Of a stretch of DNA of 64,000 nt, positions 382 through 11,859 are shown one piece after another; position 1 is the first letter of the stretch, and each line of letters opens with the position of its first letter. Source of the stretch: Phallusia mammillata (lineage: Eukaryota). Below the pieces are notes generated by a model. That model saw only the letters and a program-made list of their open reading frames with translations, was not told the DNA's origin and made no database searches. The position numbers were made by a program, and so were the translations under genes. The stretch spans positions 8,370,001 to 8,434,000 of the forward strand of contig OZ281501.1 in assembly GCA_965637545.1 (NCBI GenBank), in the 5' to 3' direction.

Positions 382-3300
382 TTATACCTCTTTAATCAAC
401 TTTTTGGCTACAGGACGAACCAAGGCCTCAAGCAGCACACTTTCCACTTTTTTCTTTACTTCCACAGGCTTTGCAAATTCAACATCATTCCTTTGCAAGA
501 TCTGTGGAACAATCTGGTCCTCTATATCAGATTCATATTCGTCTAGCTCTTGAATGTTGATTTTTTCTTGCTGAACAATAGGAGGGGGGATTTGGCCCAT
601 TACTGGGACATCGAAATTCTCAGCTTCTGTTAACTTGGGTTCCACTGAATGTGGTATTAAGTTGTCCAAGTCAGCATCATCTTGTAGTTTAGCTAATACA
701 GTTTCTGTTCCTGCTTCAGACAAAAAACTTTCATCAGTTGGGATTGCATTTCGTTGAACATTTTTTGTTAATTCTCCATGAGAAAGATTTGGGTTTAAAT
801 ACTGTTGATCTGAATTGTCCCGGTTTTTCAAAGTAATGTTTTTAAAAACACGAGGAAGCAAAATTGGTATTTCTTGAGAATGATTTTGAGCTACAGGATT
901 AGTAACTGGTGTAAGAGCAGAAATTTTATTGGCAGGTAGTTCCACCAGGTCAGATTCTGTTTCAAGATCTTTGTTTTCTAAAACTTGACTTGCATTTTGG
1001 GTTTCATTTGCTACTTCCGTGTGATTGGAAACAGCAGATTTGTGTGATTCAATTTCTGACTCTTCGGTAACTTGCTTTGTGGATAAAAAATCAGAATGGA
1101 ATTTTAAAAACAAGTTGAACTTAATGATTGACAATTTAAAGCACTACCAGTGTGTAATTAAAAAATGTAACAATTCTTCCTAAAACTCCTTAATTTTTTT
1201 TTTAATTTCATTTAAATTTAACAAAAAAAGTCATTTCGTGTATTTTTTACTGAGAAAAAACAAGATGGCTGTATTTACCTTTTTATCATCTTCGGTTAAA
1301 CTGACGTTGAAGTTTAAGTAATCCAGGGCCACATTGATCTGGGAGTACCTTGTGATGAGATATTGTGCAACATTGTTTTCTATCCATACCCTGTCAGCAG
1401 CGTAACAACTTGGACACATATCCATCGGTGGAAACTGGAGTTTTGGAAAAGCTGGGTCTTCTGTTGATGAGTTGGAATGTAACCTGCGGCAAAACTGATT
1501 TTTAAACATACAGATATTTCACATCAAGGATACGAAACACTGTAATGAGGAAAAGGGGCCTACAACACATAAGACATTGTTCAAAAATCACAGGTCAAAT
1601 CATCACAGGTGTATAACTGCAGTACTTACAATCTACTTCAATCAACAGATAAAATAGAGTTTGACTAGGGATTTAATTGAATTTGTACTTTTAAAGTACA
1701 AACATAGCTTTGAAGTACAAACATTGCCAACATGGATACCTTTCATTGACACTGTTGTGAATTCTCCATAACCACAGAACAGCACTGTAAGGACCAGTTG
1801 AACTGTTGTATGGCATTTGCTTAATTTCCTTCATGAAGTTAATCCGACATTCTCGGCAACCAAAGAAGTTTGTTATGTAAGCTGCCATAGCATTTGGAAC
1901 CAAACTTTGATCTGAAAAAAAGAATAGACTAAAAATTATGTTCCTATTTTTCCAGAAGACATTTATATTTCCTAAACACTTTGACGCATCTCATCTTTGT
2001 TCCAAAAATCAATAAAAAGGCTTTAGCCTGACCACTTATTAAAATTGTGAAGTTGAAATACTTGTTTAGGATGTCTGTAGAGCAGGGGTGGACAACCTTC
2101 TTTAAAGCTTGTGTGGCCCGCAGAGACGCTTGGATTTCAAAAGTACTGGCAAACGAGTCCAATTATTACATATTTTTGAGCTGAATAATGCGCCTGATGC
2201 TAGTTTTCTGCGATCTGGCAAAATGTGGCTAGAATCAAATACGAACTAGAATAGTGGTTTTCCTATATATTGCCAGTTTATATATACTACATCATATTTA
2301 ACGATGTATCACATATACCATTTACTATATTTATAATGGATATATATTTGGCATTGGGTCCCTATCTTTTTCCTGGCACTTTATAACATGATTGTTTCTG
2401 CAAGCATAATCTAATGGGTCCCCACACATATGCATATGCGATTTGGTATCAGTAAAAATAGGGCACAATCATTGTCAGATATTTACAATTTACTATACAC
2501 ATCATTTGATCTACACATATGATTTTTTTGCAAGCAAAAACGAATGGGTCCCCACACGCGCGTTTGTGCGGATTTATGGTAAACAAACATCCTGGTTATT
2601 TTTAGATTCTTAAGGAAAAACTTAACCAACTTTAGCAATAACCCAACTTTAAAAGTTTTGTCCGTATTCTTTTTGCATCATTATTGTCATATAATTACAA
2701 AAAACAGTAAATAAGAACAGGAAAAATACTTTCAATTTAATCTCATGCTTTGACCTTGATATTGTCGTTCAAGATCAGTTTTTAAACACAATTTTCCAAA
2801 ACTGAAAATGAGCTTAAAAACTTAATAAAACGAGATGGCATGGCTGCGCAAAAACAGCTGATTTCTAATCACCAACACGACTGTCTCGTAAAATGTCCGT
2901 CCGGACGTCAAGCTGAGCACTCCCGCTGTATTCACTAGGGATGTGCTAAAATTGCAAATGTTCTGTTTGGTCGAGCACCGAGCATCTCACGGCCGAGCAC
3001 GCTCGGTGCATTATGACATCACAGAAAATCCCCTTTCTATGTTTTAGCTCTACAAGGCCTCTTACGTCACAAGCGGTGTATTAAGCTGCACAGGCCTCAG
3101 AAGTACACGTTTTTCCACAATCTAATACATTTGAAAAATCATTTGTTTTTGTTCATAGACACCCTTTCGAACACTAGTTACCTATGTTAGCAGGGCATGA
3201 ATATGCAAATTTAATGCTCGGGTCAGTTTGTGCAACTGCTCGGCCGAGCACCGAGCACCGAGCATCAAAAATAGCGATGCTCGGTGCCGAGTACTCGGGT

Positions 3301-6300
3301 TCTGGCTCGGCTCGGCGCATCCCTAGTATTCACCGCCTTAATCGTAAACAAGTGAATTACTACCTTGAGATTTGAGACTTCTATTTAACTGACAGTGTAC
3401 ACATGTTATGGACGTAAAAGTAACTATTTGGCCGATTAAGGCAATTTTTTAAATACTGAATGAATAACCTACTGCAAACAATTGTTTAACATTTCAGCAC
3501 ATTGGGGCTTGTATTTCTGGCCTAAAACTTATTATTTGGGGGTTTAAGGGGTAAACATGGGTGAATCCAATAAAAAGTTACAAAATTCTTTAGAATAGCT
3601 TACATTGCACCAACCAACAAAGCATGAAACCCACAGATTATTGCTTGGGTCAGTACAGCCGTTTTTAATTTTTTTCGTTTTGGGGGCCTGTGGGTGAACT
3701 GCTGGGTCGTTTGGGGTCAAACTTCAGGAGGATCAAATTCGGAACAATAACTAACATCTGTGCAAATTTGAATACATTTAAAGCACTCTTTTTTGACCAA
3801 ACACATTTAACAAACCAGCGTTAGACAGAAACGAATATTTTGGGGTTTAAGGGGTGAAAATGGGTAAATCTTTTTTTAAGGTGCAAAATTCTTTGAAATA
3901 CTTTATATTGCACCAAACAACAAAGCATATAACTCCTAAATGAAGTACTTTAGCAAGTATAGCTGTTTTAAAAATTTCACGTTTTGGGGGGCTGTGGGTG
4001 AACCGAGGGATCAAACGGGGTCAAAATTCACATGGACCATCTTTAGACCAATATCTATAATGTGTGTAAATTTAAAAAAGTTTGAACCATTCTTTCTTGA
4101 CCAAAACGTGGGAACAAATCCGTGTTAGAAAGAAAAAAATATATAGACAAAAACAATATGTGTCCCCTTCAGGGAAGGGGACCCATAATTATACTTGTAG
4201 TTAAGCAAATTTGGTAAGAAACAAAGCAAAATCACTTTGTGTGATGCACATGTGTGGCCTTCGATCCAATTTTGACATTTATAATTGGGCCTACAGTAAC
4301 AAAGGTTGCCCACCCCTAACAGGGAGGATTGCTGATTATACACGACATATTTAACACTGAACAATAGAAAGCAAATAGAAACAGAAAATTCCTTACCAGG
4401 AAGTTGGGCATTGACAGAAGCAACAGACATTGTGTGAAACAGGGTCCATAATGAACATGGATATCGCCGCAAACTTGGCTTGCTGGGTTGACATCCAACC
4501 CAAAGTTTGTTGGATGGTGGCAAATATTGATCTTTCTGCCGATATGAAAAAAACTCAATTAGAAATGGTTACCATTGAAAGTATCCTATATCCTTTTGAC
4601 TTCAACATACCAACTAAATAACATCTAGTTGGAAGTCTGTATATTTTTGTCACAAATTGAAATTGAGAACTGATGACAATTGAGAACTGATGACAACTCT
4701 TAAACAATATACTAAATTTAAATTCATTTTGACATGAGAAAGATTTACCCAGGCCTATGAAAGGTCATAAGCACCATACTGTAAAAATTTGCTGTGTTTT
4801 TAATAATGCCTACCTTCTTTTGGACAATTTTCTCCATCCAAGCATTGTAGCTTATGGTGTCTTGAGTTTGAAGCCAACTGTATAGATCACTCATAAATGC
4901 ATGGGTGCTTGCACGTGCTGGCATATGCTCTCCAAGCTAAACATAAAAGGTCAAAAATGTCACATACTTTTACTTAAAATGTGCACTTAAAGTTTGGTAC
5001 CTAGTAAAAATAAGAGTTGTAAAGAAGATAAAGACAATAGATTCAGCATTTTTTATGTACACACCTTTACAAATGCAGATATAAACGTTTTTAGGCCTTC
5101 TAGTTTCTTTCCTTCAAGAACTTTGACAGCTGCAACTTCCATAGTCAGAGCATAGCGGATAGCAGACTCAATATCAGCAAGATATACTTTGTCCCTACAA
5201 AAAATGTCCACAATTACATTCAATACATGAAGATCTAATTTAACAACTTCATTTAAGCTAAACAAGTATCATTTTTTATGAAAACAAACATATTTGCTTG
5301 CCTTTTAACACCCCTGTAGTCAACTGTAACTTGATTAACATTATTATAAGAATCGGATAAGATTTGTGAAAAAGGTGAATTAAATCTTGCAATTGGTTCC
5401 CCAACTCCAGGCAGTCTGGTCAACTTGTAAGTAAAAAAGTGTCTGGTTTTCAGTTTCCTGTAAATAAAAGTAAAAGATAGGAATGAATACAATACAGCAC
5501 TAAGCTAAACAGAAGCAAATTACTATTGCTGCACACAAAATTTTGTACAATGTTTTGCTTTAAAACTTTCCACATTATCGCATTTGGGCTTGACAGGATA
5601 ACAGAAAAATATTTAGTGCATGCACTAAAGCATAAATACAATGCAGATCACAACCAGGATTTAACAGGTGGTTGTAATACATATACAGATATCTATTCTA
5701 TTGGAAACACTATTTACAGATTGTTTAATATTTTCACAAGGCTAGTCCATATTGCACTAAAAAGTAATATCCTTTTTTAGTTTCTTTATGCTGGAATAGT
5801 TTATATGCTAAATCATTTTATAAAACAAAAGCATTGTTTGTATTTTTAAAAGTACCATCGGCTAGTCAGTCAACAATCACAAACCATATTCTTACACTTG
5901 AATATTTTGAATTGTTCCATTCCTGTGAATGACAATGGCTTGTGGAAGATCATTGGTGTCAATACCAAGTTTCATGGCAAGGTCTTCACCATCTTTGCGA
6001 TTCACATTAACTCGTCGGATGAAAATGTTGGTACATGAAGATGTGTCAAGAATTACCTGTAAAATAGGAAAGTTAATTGCATTACTTCACTGATGGGTCA
6101 TTCCATGTCAAACGTCCCAGAAAAATGGCAAAATGTAACCCACCCTCTCAGATTTTTATCAAATTTCATATGTCCATGCAGCTAGTTACACTGATTTCAA
6201 CAACAAAAATTTTTTTGAAATCTATCAATGTTTCACGAAGTTATGACATTTTGAAAATATGTCAAATATGTGATCACTGCAGCGACGCGCATCAATGCTT

Positions 6301-9300
6301 TTTGATAATACTGTGTTTAAAATGTCATATTTCTTTCTAATTTGTATATTGTGGTCATTTTGGTAGGTTAGGTGAACCTTTAGGACATTCTCAATCACCT
6401 CATTACAGTTTTTCATGTTTTTGAAATATGGGTCAGTAATTGAGGGGGGTTCAGTTTGGGGGTATGCGAATGTGCATTCATGCGTAACGACAACTTTAAA
6501 AGCTCATATCTTGAAGAGCACACTAGCTAGAAAGTTAAGTAATGGCTCAAATGAAAGCTCTTGCTGAGTACTTTCCTTGTTCTTAATTTTATGATGCTTC
6601 TCTGTAATTTGTTTAAAGGAGGGTCATAATAAAACACAGGTTCATTTTTCGGATATTTTTGTGATACTGCGTCTGTTATCTATACTTTATGTGCCCTAAT
6701 TTGTTATTAAAAGTTGTTAAGATGCAAAAGTTTAGTGTAGGTGTCTCACTGGATACTGAATGCCACAAAAAGACATATCCAACACAAAAACAAGGTATTT
6801 TACCAATTGACTTTCTAACAGATGAAGAGCAAGTGCTTCTGAATATTCGAGTTACTGCTGATAAGGGTAATGAATGTTGTTTGGAGAACGTATGAATTTT
6901 CCACAGGTACAATTACATTGGTCGGTACCCTTCCTTGCAGAAGAAGTGTTGTAATCCTTTTCGAGTCCACAGTAAACCAGTCAAAAATCGTAATATACGT
7001 CCTATCACTTGGGAATATTACCAAAAATATAAAAATTACAATTTAAACATTGCACCGTGAAAAGGTGTGATTTTCCCTTTTGAGGTAGTCGTTTCTCTTG
7101 ACCAATTGCTTGGGTATCATTGTGGGGACTTGTATTTTTCTGCTATCGTACTGTCACTGTTCCTAATTTTTTTTCATTTTAGAGATAATGTTGTCAAAAG
7201 ATTTTATTTTCATTTTGTCTTCGTCTTTAGTGTCAGGTTGGTCTTGCTATAGGTCTACATCACTGACATTAAAAAAATTGGACATCTTTGCATGAAGGGT
7301 ATCATTAATTTGACATAATTTTCTTTGCCCATAGAAAATGTTACTGCTTGAAGGCACACTATGCAACTTCACAGGTAATCACCTCAACGCTCTGTAAACT
7401 TTCATTAAGCTTGCTGAAAGATGCGTTTGCTTTAACAGTAGATGCAATGTTACATATTTCACTGTCAGTCGAACTCGAAGCTTCTTCATTTGATGATACA
7501 TTTTGAAGGATAGTTTCTTTAAGTCTTGTACTGCATTTGGCACACACCTTTTTTTTCTGGTACAATATTTAAATTACAATTTTTATATTTTGGTAACATT
7601 CCCAAGTGAGTGGACGTATATTACGATTTTTGACTGGTTAACTGTGAACTTGAAAAGGATCACAACACTTCTTCTGCAAGGAAGGGTACCGACCAATGTA
7701 ATTGTACCTGTGGAAAATACATACGTTCTTCAAACAACATTCATTACCCTAATCAGCAGCAACTCAAATATTCAGAAGCACTTGCTCTTCATCTGTTAGA
7801 AAGTCAATTGGTTAAATACCTAGTTTTTGTGTTGGATATGTCTTTTTGTGGCATTCAGTATCCAGTGAGACACCTGCACTACACTTTTGCATCTTAACAA
7901 CTTTTAAAAACAAATTAGGGCACATAAAGTATAGATAATAGAAGCAGTATCACAAAAATATCCGAAAAATGAACCTGTGTTTTATTATGACCCTCCTTTA
8001 AACAAATTACAGAGAAGCATCATAAAATTAAGAACAAGGAAAGTACTCAGCAAGAGCTTTCATTTGAGCCATTACTTAACTTTCTAGCTAGTGTGCTCTT
8101 CAAGATATGAGCTTTTAAAGTTGTCGTTACGCATGAATGCACATTCGCATACCCCCAAACTGAACCCCCTTTAATTACTGACCCATATTTCAAAAACATG
8201 AAAAACTGTAATGAGGTGATTGAGAATGTCCTAAAGGTTCACCTAACCTACTAAAATGACCACAATATACAAATTAGAAAGAAATATGACATTTTAAACA
8301 CAGTATTATCAAAAAGCATTGATGCGCGTCGCTGCAGTGATCACATATTTGACATATTTTCAAAATGTCATAACTTCGTGAAACATTGATAGATTTCAAA
8401 AAATTTTTTTTTTTTGAAATCAGTGTAACTAGCTGCATGGACATATGAAATTTGATAAAAATCTGAGGGGGTGGGTTATATGGCCTGGGCAGTTGACATG
8501 GAATGACCCTGATGAAATGGCATCACAAATCCTTCAGCATTATGCAAACTGGAAGTGTGAACAATTGACAAACAGGATATATGCGTAAACTGGGCGTAGT
8601 TTAAAAACTAATTCAAATCACTTCCATGTAGCAAACTCAGTATGAACAAATTGTCCAAATTTGTCAAAGATCCAGATTAACTGATGTCAATTAGTAAAAG
8701 TCTTTCCACATTACACATTATTTGTACTTTAAATTTTGTTCAAATTAGGCAAAGATCCGGATTAACTGAATGTGGTTTACCCAAGGTTCACTGTACTACA
8801 CAAGTCCAAGGGTACTGAACAGAGAAAATATGCTTAATACTTTCTTAAGTGAAAATCTAATTAGATTTTGTATTAATACAAGAACAAAAGTAAACCAAAG
8901 AAAATTTTTACCTCTCTTCCAATATACGAATTCTCATCTTCAAATATAACAGCTGTGTATAAGATAGGTTCAGAGCTTGGAGCTGGAGAAAGATCATTCA
9001 TCACCTCTTCTGACCTAAAATACAAAATATGTGTTAAGCACCATGCTTAAAAATAGAAATACATAAATATATTAAAATGTAACGTACCCAGAGACTCTGA
9101 GAATTGGTTTCGGTCTTTCATGAGTCCATTTAAGATCACTGATGTGTTTTGCAATGTAATCAATAATCTCTCTCCTTATTTCATTCATTCCTTGGTCACC
9201 TTAATGAACATACAACGTGTAGAAACAAACATTGTAAGAAGTTTAATTTTAACTGTGAGTAATGTGTTTTAAAAAAGCATATTGCACTAATACAAGTTAT

Positions 9301-11423
9301 AGAACCACTCTAACTCACACTTGTATAATATTTATTGCGTCAATTTTTTTTTAGTTGATTTAATCTTAATAAAAGACTTGTACCTTTGTAAGTTTCTCCA
9401 GGATTACTGACATTAGAAAAAGCTGGATAAAACTGGAAAATATGAATAAAAAGTATTGAAGTATTAAAAGCAGAAAAGTATAAACCAGAAGATAATTTGG
9501 TTCCCAAAACAAAAGGCACATTCCAATCAAACAATAAGTTAACCCAAAACTTCTCAGTTGAAAGTTCCAATTAATCATTGGTAAAACAACACATATTTTT
9601 TTTTCAAATTTAGAGGTTCTCTGTTTAGAAATGAAATTTTACTAATTCAAACAAGCATAAAGATAAACACACAGCAAATTTTCCAAAAATTAATTATTAT
9701 TGCATGCAATTTATTAGTGGAAATTTTGGCAGAAAACATTACTATCTAAAATCCTATTAGGAATCAATGAACATTGTTCCATCACACCAGGTATGTGTAA
9801 ATAAAAGTATTCTGATGATAGAAGTAAATCTTGAAATGATTTACACAGAAACAACATTTAAAACTAAATTGAGACCCTCAAACACTATTTTGCTACAAAG
9901 ACAGACCACCATGTGCTAATGTACCCGAAATTCTGGATAATCATAAACCCAAAATGGATGTCTATGACATGATAAAAAATTCTCGTCACCGCTTGGGGCA
10001 GTGTCACCACAGTTTATTGCTCCAATACGAAACAACCAACTCCATCCTGAATTGCAAGGTAAAAAATTAAAACTTCAAATATTAGAATTATATAAACTTA
10101 AAAAAATTAAGCTTGGGAAAACCATGCATTTCTTACAAGCCAATGCAAACATAATAGAATTTGTTTTAGAAGAATTACATGCACAATTTTCAATCAAGCA
10201 ATTTGGCATTCATAAATCTGTGGCATGCTAACATTACCCGAAGAGTGGGATAGTCAAGAATTGACATATTCCGACATATCTGCACATTCATCGAGTTTGG
10301 ACAATTGATAACACCAACTTTAAGCAGCATGTGCCACTCTGGAAACAGGGACAAGGTTGGGGACACAATTTATGGATTGAAACATTGGTATGCCATTAAT
10401 GAGTTAACAAGTTGTAAATGTTAACATGAGATTAAACATTGTATGGTATACATACATACACTAAGCAGTGGTTACCAGACTTTTTTGATGCAACCCAAAT
10501 ACTTAAGCTAAGTAGTGAGCTGACAAATAGCTTATGGCGTCACAAACAAAGACACTGTTTATCACATTATCACAAGCTAGGATAACGTTATTGTTTCACA
10601 ACAGTTTTGTGAAAAATAAAAACACTAGAAAATACAGATAAAAACAAATTATTTTGTTACAAAAACAGACAACCCAGAAGAAATTTTAGGAGACTCAACT
10701 TTGGGTTGTAACCAATACTTTGAAAAACACTGGTGTAAGGTAGTAATTGGGTGCAGAAAGGAAACGGATGTAATATTGTCAAAGTTTCTCTAAATGATTT
10801 TTATAAATTTCACAGATAGGTCTACTTGCTTAACTCAATGTTTGGTTGTGGAAATACTTGAAGTAAGACGATACAACAAACACCATACCTGCCACATCCT
10901 TTGCCAATGCCTTAAAAATAGGTGCAAATTCTTGACAATGCCCACACCATGATGAGTAATACTCAACTAACCAGAGAGTTTGACTGCAACAAACAAAAAG
11001 TCAGAAGAAGAAAATGTATAATCAAGCCAAGTCAGAGGTTCTAATGCTAAATTATACTACATACGGGTATTGGTATTTATATGCCTAATTTGTCATGCAT
11101 TAGCACATTAAATGTTGTTTAGGCTTTAGTATCCCATGTTAATGTATAAAGCCTCTGAATGGCTAATAAAAGGTTTATATGGCTATAGTAATGCTTGATA
11201 CTTTTGGATTTTAAAGAGATTTTTATCATATCATAAAATAGTGGTATAAAGCAGATGCAAAAAATGTATAAAACCTGGTTGATAGGGTCTTCAACAAGTT
11301 GTCCCCATTAAAAATGGTCACGTTATCTTTTTCATCATAAAGCCCTTTTTCAACTGCTGCATCAGATGTCACACATTGAATATAGTACACTATAATTAGC
11401 ATCAAACAACTCCTAATAAGCAT
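382..11423 (-). CDS. QSOX: Quiescin sulfhydryl oxidase (Trx1-Trx2-HRR-Erv), 14 coding exons, about 795 aa using exon 3a
   Basis: Exons (minus strand): 11423-11275, 10983-10889, [10338-10238 or 10046-9925], 9432-9384, 9199-9088, 9014-8912, 6056-5896, 5457-5302, 5194-5065, 4936-4814, 4535-4397, 1911-1740, 1483-1279, 1074-382. Phases are consistent and the total of 2388 nt is divisible by 3. Motifs: signal peptide [20 protein letters not shown], Trx [38 protein letters not shown], Erv [32 protein letters not shown]. The last exon's acceptor (AAG at 1075) and the 3' end are less certain. Confidence 0.95.
2244..4188 (-). mobile_element. Helentron/DINE-1-like non-autonomous element (HINE), copy 1, in a QSOX intron
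   Basis: Plus strand runs AACTAGAATAGTGG...GTCCCCTTC-AGG-GAAGGGGAC-CCATAA: a 9-bp terminal stem, an inverted subTIR ATGGGTCCCC at 2414 and 2544, two internal units of about 300 bp and no TSD. It is co-linear with copy 2. Confidence 0.75.
2936..3325. mobile_element. hAT (Ac-type) MITE nested in HINE copy 1
   Basis: TAGGGATG...CATCCCTA termini, a perfect 8-bp TSD GTATTCAC (2928-2935 and 3326-3333) and subterminal CCGAGCA repeats. An empty site is visible in copy 2. Confidence 0.9.
6095..8509. mobile_element. Non-autonomous foldback DNA transposon with about 970-bp inverted arms (Sola2-like by inference)
   Basis: Termini GGGTCATTCCATGTCAA...TTGACATGGAATGACCC, flanked by an identical 4-bp TGAT (6091-6094 and 8510-8513). 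Arms 6095-7069 and 7543-8509 look about 95% identical in a 90-nt sample. The spacer is 473 bp. Confidence 0.85.
7075..7892 (-). pseudogene. Decayed N-terminal part of a transposase-like ORF (second partial copy at 6722-7060 on +)
   Basis: Consensus of both arms: [19 protein letters not shown]...[31 protein letters not shown]...VPEKKVCAKC. The spacer continues [15 protein letters not shown]...YGQRKL...EKYKS..MIPSNWSRE, with stops and frameshifts. Confidence 0.7.
9925..10046 (-). CDS. QSOX: QSOX alternative exon 3b (phase 1-0, 122 nt): [41 protein letters not shown]
   Basis: Splice sites ttttttaccttgcaattcag|GA...TTTCGG|gtacat. Open only in the needed frame and paralogous to 3a (W...G.INC...C...DYP..R). 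Confidence 0.82.
10238..10338 (-). CDS. QSOX: QSOX alternative exon 3a (phase 1-0, 101 nt): [34 protein letters not shown]
   Basis: Splice sites ccctgtttccag|AG...CTTCGG|gtaatg. Matches the QSOX Trx1 segment with two structural Cys followed by xPTxR. Confidence 0.9.
10466..10732. mobile_element. Degenerate Charlie-like MITE in QSOX intron 2
   Basis: CAGTGGTTACCA...AAAAACACTG ends with subterminal CAACCCAA/TTGGGTTG. No clean TSD. Confidence 0.4.
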
Positions 11424-11435
11424 ACCGAAATCAAT

Positions 11436-11462
11436 CTAAACAAAAAAAACACAATACAAAAA
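11436..11462 (-). promoter_or_regulatory. Splice acceptor 12 nt upstream of the QSOX ATG (candidate SL trans-splice site)
   Basis: Minus strand reads gtattgtgttttttttgtttag|attgatttcggtATG. It lies about 140 nt downstream of the COA3 stop, leaving little room for a separate promoter. Confidence 0.6.
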
Positions 11463-11577: not shown

Positions 11578-11859
11578 TTATTTTTCATGTTTTTGAACTT
11601 CAATTTCAAGTTCATCGATCAAATTGTCTTTTGACATTTGATAAATTGTATATCCATAAACTGAAGCAATAAATCCAGCAACCCCTAGGGCCATAAAGAT
11701 CTTTCTAGAGCCGTGTTTCTTGTTGAAGACTTGGAATTGCTTTTTGTTGTAATTTTCAATAAACTTGCGCTGTTGTGGAGACAGATTATCTCTTGTCACA
11801 TCGACACGGCGCATTCGGGGATGTTCAGGATCCACACTTTGGGGTGTTGGAGCTGACAT
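11578..11859 (-). CDS. COA3: Cytochrome c oxidase assembly factor 3 (CCDC56), single coding exon, 93 aa
   Basis: MSAPTP...RRVDVTRDNLSPQQ...ALGVAGFIASVYGYTIYQMSKDNLIDELE resembles human COA3 as recalled (RIDPTREKLTPEQ...[29 protein letters not shown]). One TM helix. A splice acceptor (tttgctttag|) lies 22 nt upstream of the ATG. Confidence 0.9.
   Translation of the reverse strand: MSAPTPQSVDPEHPRMRRVDVTRDNLSPQQRKFIENYNKKQFQVFNKKHGSRKIFMALGVAGFIASVYGYTIYQMSKDNLIDELEIEVQKHEK

What the first reader, a model, noticed from the sequence alone, without database searches (positions are those of the whole stretch)
9925..10338. Duplicated, mutually exclusive exon pair remodels the Trx1 domain of QSOX
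Two tandem exons encode the same segment directly after the WCGHC active-site exon. 3a is [34 protein letters not shown] and 3b is [41 protein letters not shown]. Both are phase 1-0 (101 and 122 nt), so including both or neither shifts the frame. Both keep the two Cys of the structural disulfide and the DYP motif equivalent to the cis-proline loop that faces the CxxC. Exon 3b lengthens the inter-Cys loop (13 versus 8 residues), adds aromatic residues and lacks the NMS sequon of 3a. Inference: one gene encodes two oxidases with different substrate-contact surfaces. I know of no such pair in vertebrate QSOX genes. The ORF track misses it.
Basis: partly seen in the sequence, partly recalled or inferred. 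Interest (0 to 1): 0.8.

Follow-up and report, generated by a model that had tools for sequence, protein, structure and literature searches.

The report
Twin alternative exons in QSOX enzyme
A sea-squirt-type gene for the disulfide-forming enzyme QSOX carries two old, conserved versions of one exon of its catalytic domain; both are kept as coding sequence, but RNA that uses the second version alone has not yet been seen in this animal.

Summary
On the minus strand, right after the WCGHC exon (10983-10889), lie two homologous exons: 3a (10338-10238, 101 nt) and 3b (10046-9925, 122 nt). Both have AG/GT sites and phase 1-0.

- **RNA, four runs (contigs only):** all four show e2-3a-e4. One run holds a contig that uses both predicted 3b splice sites, but joined to 3a (3a-3b-e4). 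That form shifts the frame and stops at codon 11 of 3b. No e2-3b junction was seen.
- **Comparison across species:**
  - A related species keeps both exons in the same order and with the same lengths. Its 3b is 82.5% identical in protein against 58% for 3a. Twenty of 29 base changes fall at third codon positions, while the introns cannot be aligned.
  - A second relative has only a 3b-type exon.
  - A third relative has only a 3a-type exon.
  - Two metatranscriptome mRNAs join e2 directly to a 3b-type exon.
- **Conclusion:** 3b is an old, protein-coding alternative exon, and its conserved frame is reached only when 3a is skipped. Mutually exclusive use is strongly inferred but not directly shown here.
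- **Context:** the same scan has already noted other mutually exclusive exon pairs in this genome. I found no paper describing such a pair in QSOX.

The parts
11275..11435 (-). QSOX exon 1 (ATG at 11423; signal peptide and start of Trx1). Spliced-leader acceptor AG at 11437-11436.
   Evidence: Joint 10983/11275 in RNA contigs. The loose end at 11437 reads as the ascidian spliced leader.
10889..10983 (-). QSOX exon 2, which encodes the WCGHC redox site and ends in phase 1.
   Evidence: Pfam Thioredoxin E 1.2e-9. Joints 10983/11275 and 10338/10889 in all four runs.
10238..10338 (-). Exon 3a, 101 nt, canonical QSOX type (8 residues between the Cys pair). It is the default exon in all RNA seen.
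   Evidence: 58% identical to the ortholog at L007:12879-12779.
10047..10237 (-). Intron between 3a and 3b, 191 nt (200 nt in the relative). It is retained in low-depth contigs of two runs.
   Evidence: Joint 10045/10237 (cut +1) in X3; unspliced contigs 9843-10267 and 9842-10134 in X1 and X2; intron lengths.
9925..10046 (-). Exon 3b, 122 nt, divergent type (13 residues between the Cys pair and 2 extra residues before the cis-Pro). An alternative coding exon.
   Evidence: Both splice sites are used in the X3 contig. 82.5% protein identity to L007:12578-12457, with 20 of 29 differences at third codon positions. 3b-type exons also occur in L013, L014 and L017.
9384..9432 (-). QSOX exon 4 ([16 protein letters not shown]), joined to 3a or to 3b.
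   Evidence: Joints 9432/10238 (four runs) and 9432/9925 (X3).
385..9199 (-). Remaining QSOX exons (rest of Trx1, Trx2, helix-rich region, ERV/ALR module with its CRECR motif, C-terminal tail). Inner boundaries were fixed only for exon 5 (9199-9088) and exon 6 (9014-8912).
   Evidence: Open stretches and tblastn to QSOX proteins; Pfam Evr1_Alr; PDB QSOX1 hits; joints.

Best explanation
Exons 3a and 3b are an ancient tandem duplicate of the exon that encodes strand beta3, helix alpha3 and the cis-proline loop of the catalytic Trx1 domain of QSOX. Both are maintained as protein-coding alternatives.

The default mRNA takes 3a. 3b can only be read in its conserved frame when it follows exon 2 directly, that is, when 3a is skipped. 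So the functional 3b product must be e2-3b-e4: a QSOX whose Trx1 has a longer, remodelled Cys-Cys loop and an acidic residue after the cis-Pro, next to the CxxC.

Exclusivity is enforced mainly by reading frame. Taking both exons gives a stop at codon 11 of 3b, which probably makes that mRNA an NMD target, and taking neither also shifts the frame.

Shown here: the exon anatomy, the splicing of 3b, its coding constraint, and its use as coding sequence in relatives. Inferred: the existence of the e2-3b-e4 mRNA in this species, and any difference in substrate range or redox behaviour.
For: - **Anatomy and homology:**
- **RNA:** both 3b splice sites are used (X3 contig, joints 10045/10237 and 9432/9925).
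- **Relative 1 (L007-L010, L018, L019):** same order e2, 3a (101 nt), 3b (122 nt), e4, with AG/GT kept. 3b matches 33/40 residues against 19/33 for 3a. Differences by codon position are 7/2/20 (chi-square p 1.3e-4). dN is 0.09 with dS saturated. The introns share no alignable blocks.
- **Relative 2 (L013):** a 3b-type exon is the only exon 3 found, and it is in phase with e2.
- **Transcripts L014/P0185 and L017 (two species):** they read ...ISGWSWIFRIG...DYPDFRFYPSK, that is, e2 joined directly to 3b and then e4.
- **Tree:** 3b-bearing lineages lie on at least three branches of one clade, so the duplication predates their split.
- **Model:** a 3b-type Trx1 folds confidently (pLDDT 92.9, with 91-97 over the 3b segment) and best matches human QSOX1 Trx1, 3Q6O, TM 0.76.
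Against: - No e2-3b junction (10889 to 10046) was seen in the four RNA runs laid.
- The only spliced 3b RNA also carries 3a and is out of frame, at about a quarter of the local depth in that run (7.4 against 20.9), which is a lot for a by-product.
- These are assembled contigs, which drop rare variants, and only four of at least 16 candidate runs were laid.
- P0185 and L017 are truncated, HTEL-ended proteins. They may be a paralog rather than an isoform of the orthologous gene.
- No conserved intronic pairing elements that could enforce exclusivity were found.
Confidence: 0.7

Rival explanations
1. In this species 3b works only as a regulated 'poison' cassette. Its inclusion after 3a introduces a premature stop and lowers QSOX output through NMD. 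The peptide it could encode is not made.
For: The only spliced 3b RNA seen is 3a-3b-e4, with a stop at codon 11 of 3b. The phase-0 reading also stops early in the relative, at codon 8. Inclusion is run-specific: it appears in X3 only.
Against: Substitutions between species concentrate at third codon positions of the phase-1 frame (7/2/20), and 18 changed codons are synonymous against 7 non-synonymous. A poison exon needs no such peptide constraint. Both Cys, the Pro and 22 of 40 residues are invariant in four species. Relatives translate a 3b-type exon.
Confidence: 0.12
2. 3b was a working alternative exon in the ancestor and still is in relatives, but it has recently fallen out of productive use in this lineage. 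What is seen is splicing noise from still-intact sites.
For: No productive junction was seen in four runs. Related lineages have resolved the pair by losing one copy: L013 keeps 3b only and L012 keeps 3a only.
Against: The window's 3b has an intact frame and intact splice sites. Against outgroups, the two replacements that can be placed on the window's own branch (D for E, Y for F) are both conservative; three other differences from L007 cannot be placed. Its identity to the sister species is higher than that of the constitutive 3a.
Confidence: 0.13
3. The resemblance is chance, or 3b is an assembly or annotation artefact.
For: None beyond the short length of the exons.
Against: 3b is spliced in RNA and is conserved in independent assemblies from several studies. 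BLASTP gives E 2e-6 for the single comparison.
Confidence: 0.01

Closest known systems
Mutually exclusive, tandemly duplicated exons (as in insect myosin heavy chain, PMC2257972, and in many ion-channel genes)
   Same: Adjacent homologous exons of the same phase class, each with its own splice sites, encoding the same structural segment. Including both or neither breaks the frame. Both copies are conserved across species.
   Different: Strict one-or-the-other use has not been observed here: one RNA contig carries both exons. The 191-nt intron rules out steric exclusion, both introns are GT-AG, and no docking or selector pairing was found.
Vertebrate QSOX1 and QSOX2 (human QSOX1 Trx1, PDB 3Q6O; mouse 3T58)
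   Same: Same domain order (Trx1 with WCGHC, Trx2, helix-rich region, ERV/ALR with CxxC). 3a has the canonical 8-residue Cys-Cys loop and an aromatic-Pro-Thr cis-Pro motif (YPT here; I recall FPT for human QSOX1). The 3b-type model superposes on 3Q6O (TM 0.76).
   Different: From my own knowledge, the known vertebrate QSOX1 isoforms differ at the C-terminus (membrane anchor or not), not in Trx1. Vertebrates diversify by having two genes. The 3b-type loop (13 residues, CH..P.WV.DYP[ED]) was found in none of the other QSOX proteins fetched.
NMD-coupled unproductive splicing (poison exons)
   Same: The 3a+3b transcript carries a premature stop far upstream of later junctions.
   Different: 3b shows codon-periodic, peptide-level conservation, which poison exons do not need.

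Membership tests
QSOX (quiescin sulfhydryl oxidase) | N-terminal thioredoxin domain with a CxxC redox site | tested here: met
   Exon 2 encodes WCGHC. Pfam Thioredoxin E 1.2e-9.
QSOX (quiescin sulfhydryl oxidase) | C-terminal ERV/ALR FAD-binding module with CxxC, in the same polypeptide | tested here: met
   Pfam Evr1_Alr E 3.8e-12 on window:1694-1990. PDB QSOX1 chains are the top hits. RNA contigs link exons 1 to 6, and a 2782-nt contig in X13 runs on beyond exon 6. Exon order is colinear with full-length QSOX proteins.
QSOX (quiescin sulfhydryl oxidase) | Sulfhydryl oxidase activity (O2 to H2O2) | not testable with these tools
   Needs an enzyme assay.
Mutually exclusive exon pair | Adjacent, homologous exons with their own splice sites and compatible phase | tested here: met
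Mutually exclusive exon pair | Each mature mRNA contains exactly one of the two | tested here: inconclusive
   3a-only mRNA in four runs. One 3a+3b contig in X3. No 3b-only junction seen. Contig-level data only.
Mutually exclusive exon pair | Both copies kept under coding constraint across species | tested here: met
   Both exons are present in relative 1. For 3b, dN is 0.09 with dS saturated; for 3a, dN is 0.35 and dS 1.34.
Poison (NMD) cassette exon | Inclusion introduces a premature stop | tested here: met
   After 3a, 3b reads [10 protein letters not shown] followed by a stop.
Poison (NMD) cassette exon | Conservation not tied to a reading frame | tested here: not met
   Differences by codon position are 7/2/20, p 1.3e-4.

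The most novel reading that the evidence does not exclude
An ancient switch inside the catalytic Trx1 domain lets one tunicate QSOX gene make two oxidases with different partner or redox properties. Different lineages have since fixed the choice in different ways: a 3b-only gene, a 3a-only gene, and a truncated 3b-type protein with signal peptide, Trx1, Trx2 and a C-terminal HTEL tail, which looks ER-retained. That pattern would mark the 3b-type surface as serving a distinct, possibly ER-resident, thiol-exchange role.
Probability: 0.3. Interest if true: 0.65.

Novelty: new member of a known kind. Interest (0 to 1): 0.5.

Why it matters
QSOX is the only enzyme that combines thiol-disulfide exchange and de novo disulfide generation in one chain. 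Its Trx1 domain both picks the substrate and docks on the ERV module. An evolutionarily maintained choice between two versions of the beta3-alpha3-cis-Pro segment, which sits next to the CxxC, would be a natural experiment on what tunes QSOX specificity or redox potential. It can be tested directly with two recombinant isoforms. It also shows how lineages trade alternative splicing against loss of one copy, or possibly against a separate gene.

Tried and rejected
- **Conserved intronic docking or selector elements:** blastn-short between the window and relative 1 from e2 to e4 found only the exons. Inverted repeats in the window are short and not conserved; the best, 16 nt between e2 and 3a, is absent from the relative.
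- **Steric or U12-type exclusion:** rejected. The intron is 191 nt and all sites are GT-AG.
- **The species' own annotated protein or isoforms:** not found in the protein collections. A search restricted to the 3b region of P0185 returned only P0185 itself.
- **A 3a relic in L013 and a 3b relic in L012:** none found by tblastn (E below 1) or by motif scan.
- **An HTEL-type alternative end in the window or in the genomic relatives:** none found.
- **Rfam scan of the window:** no hits.
- **Literature:** QSOX or 'sulfhydryl oxidase' with 'mutually exclusive' gave no relevant paper. Sample accessions were found in no paper.
- **An alternative acceptor 2 nt into 3a that might restore the frame of a double inclusion:** it runs into a stop, so rejected (read by eye).
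- **Models of the window's own spliced isoforms:** not attempted, because a spliced product has no reference form.

Full report
**Observation**

The gene lies on the minus strand. Exon 2 (10983-10889) encodes ...[24 protein letters not shown] and ends in phase 1. Exon 3a is 10338-10238 (101 nt) and exon 3b is 10046-9925 (122 nt). Both are preceded by a pyrimidine tract and AG, and both are followed by GT. Exon 4 starts at 9432 in phase 0. The two peptides are homologous (BLASTP 30% identity, E 2e-6 for the single comparison). They align column for column with the same segment of QSOX Trx1, and the two Cys and the Pro fall in nearly invariant columns. 3a has the canonical 8-residue spacing between the Cys pair, as do 23 of 32 other QSOX proteins scanned. 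3b has 13 residues there, plus two extra residues before the Pro.

**Gene context**

- Pfam finds Thioredoxin on exon 2 and Evr1_Alr on the exon at about 1739-1909.
- PDB searches return QSOX1 chains.
- tblastn with full-length QSOX proteins lays out colinear exons from about 11420 down to about 1260.
- A COA3-like single-exon gene ends 144 nt upstream.
- A loose contig end at the exon-1 acceptor, reverse-complemented, reads ...ATTCTATTTGAATA. Together with the genomic AG this is the 16-nt spliced leader published for Ciona (PMC1488885).
- So the animal is a tunicate and the mRNA is trans-spliced. I did not verify the species name.

**RNA evidence**

I laid four likely RNA runs from three studies. 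All are Logan contigs, so they show presence, not absence.

- All four runs show e1-e2-3a-e4-e5-e6, with joints 10338/10889 and 9432/10238.
- Run X3 also has a 177-nt contig (depth 7.4, against 20.9 for the 3a-e4 joint). It consists of the last 31 nt of 3a, the whole of 3b and 25 nt of exon 4, with joints at exactly the predicted 3b acceptor and donor.
- 3b is therefore a real, spliced exon, but in this contig it sits behind 3a. In that phase it reads [10 protein letters not shown] followed by a stop.
- No contig joined 10889 to 10046.
- Runs X1 and X2 hold low-depth unspliced contigs (9843-10267 and 9842-10134). These cover the 3a-3b intron, 3b and 82 nt beyond, while other introns are uncovered. 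That fits slow, regulated splicing around 3b.

**Comparative evidence**

A profile-free search with the ERV exon gave a 72%-identical fragment. It lies on metagenome contigs of a related species.

| Source | What it shows |
|---|---|
| Relative 1 (L007 and five near-identical contigs from other samples) | e2, a 101-nt 3a, a 122-nt 3b and e4 in the same order, splice sites kept. 3b is 33/40 identical to the window, 3a only 19/33. |
| Relative 2 (L013, a 547-kb contig) | e2 followed 2.7 kb later by a 3b-type exon in phase. No 3a-type exon detectable. |
| Relative 3 (L012) | Only a 3a-type exon. |
| Metatranscriptome contigs L014/P0185 and L017 (two species, 76% nucleotide identity) | e2 joined directly to a 3b-type exon and then e4. 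|

A tree built without exon 3 for the genomic rows puts all of these in one well-supported clade, far from named hemichordate, echinoderm, mollusc and arthropod QSOX. The 3b-bearing lineages sit on at least three of its branches. The duplication therefore predates their divergence, and some lineages later lost one copy.

**Selection**

- Between the window and relative 1, 3b has 29 base differences. Twenty are at third codon positions (7/2/20, chi-square p 1.3e-4). Eighteen changed codons are synonymous against 7 non-synonymous. dN is 0.09 with dS saturated.
- The pattern holds in all six pairwise comparisons among four species.
- 3a is less constrained (dN 0.35, dS 1.34).
- The introns between e2 and e4 share nothing alignable.
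- Twenty-two of 40 residues of 3b are invariant in four species.
- This constraint is on the peptide, in the frame that is reached only when 3b directly follows exon 2.

**Structure**

An AlphaFold2 model of a 3b-type Trx1 (P0185:48-200, 70-row alignment) is confident: mean pLDDT 92.9, and 91-97 across the 3b segment. Its best PDB matches are the human and mouse QSOX1 oxidoreductase fragments (3Q6O, TM 0.76, rmsd 1.7). A 3a-type model (P0152:26-176, pLDDT 91.4) has a helix spanning most of the Cys-Cys segment (residues 74-82). The 3b-type model instead has two bridge residues and only a short helix (80-84) before the second Cys.

From established knowledge of the thioredoxin fold, this exon encodes beta3, alpha3 and the cis-Pro loop, which flank the CxxC and form part of the substrate groove. 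3b-type exons have Glu or Asp after the cis-Pro where 3a-type and most QSOX have Thr. Whether this changes specificity, redox potential or docking on the ERV module is an inference.

**Mechanism and rivals**

The best-supported reading is an old pair of alternative coding exons. 3a is the default, and 3b is a regulated alternative that is productive only when 3a is skipped. The frame, and probably NMD, penalises double inclusion (confidence 0.7). The main weakness is that the productive junction was not seen here.

Two rivals remain:

- 3b may now act only as a poison cassette (0.12). The codon-periodic conservation argues against this.
- 3b may have recently fallen out of use in this lineage (0.13). 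Its intact frame and sites argue against this, as do the conservative replacements seen where a change can be placed on the window's own branch.

**Comparison with what is known, and novelty**

Tandem mutually exclusive exons are a well-known device. The scan has already noted others in this genome, in neurexin and in a PTH-type receptor. I found no paper linking QSOX to mutually exclusive exons. No other fetched QSOX protein has a 3b-type segment apart from P0185. I therefore class this as a new member of a known kind, of moderate interest.

**Limits**

- Read tools were capped at one call, so only four runs were examined, and only at contig level.
- The species' own proteins are not in the protein collections.
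- The relatives are unnamed metagenome contigs.
- P0185 and L017 end after Trx2 with a conserved ...RRRHTEL tail, and may be a paralog rather than an isoform.

Noticed in passing
window 11436-11437 (minus strand), exon 1 acceptor: The QSOX mRNA appears to be trans-spliced. The X3 loose end, reverse-complemented, reads GTACGGGATTCTATTTGAATA. With the genomic AG this equals the published Ciona spliced leader ATTCTATTTGAATAAG, which points to a tunicate genome.
   Followed up: partly
window 11578-11859 (minus strand): A COA3-like single-exon gene (Pfam Coa3_cc, E 1.8e-7) is expressed as an unspliced contig. It ends 144 nt upstream of the QSOX spliced-leader acceptor, so the two genes may form an operon.
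   Followed up: no
L014:1-1146 (P0185) and L017:82-1155: Two related species express a protein with a signal peptide, a 3b-type Trx1 and Trx2. It stops after a conserved tail ending in RRRHTEL, which resembles an ER-retention signal, and it has no ERV module. No matching tail exon exists in the window or in the genomic relatives.
   Followed up: partly
L015:3001-4923: P0156 is a complete 640-residue, 3a-type QSOX encoded without introns on a 128-kb contig. It is probably a retrogene in a species close to relative 3.
   Followed up: no
window 9842-10267: Runs X1 and X2 hold low-depth unspliced contigs covering only the 3a-3b intron, 3b and 82 nt downstream. They end at 9843 and 9842, beside a GTAAAT, while other QSOX introns are uncovered. 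The cause is not resolved.
   Followed up: no
L013:7404-7493: In the relative that has only the 3b-type exon, the redox motif in exon 2 is WCEHC rather than WCGHC.
   Followed up: no
window 11277: Runs X1 and X2 carry a synonymous base difference two bases from the exon 1 donor (ACC to ACA in gene sense). The read tool reports it as a joint with one extra letter.
   Followed up: partly
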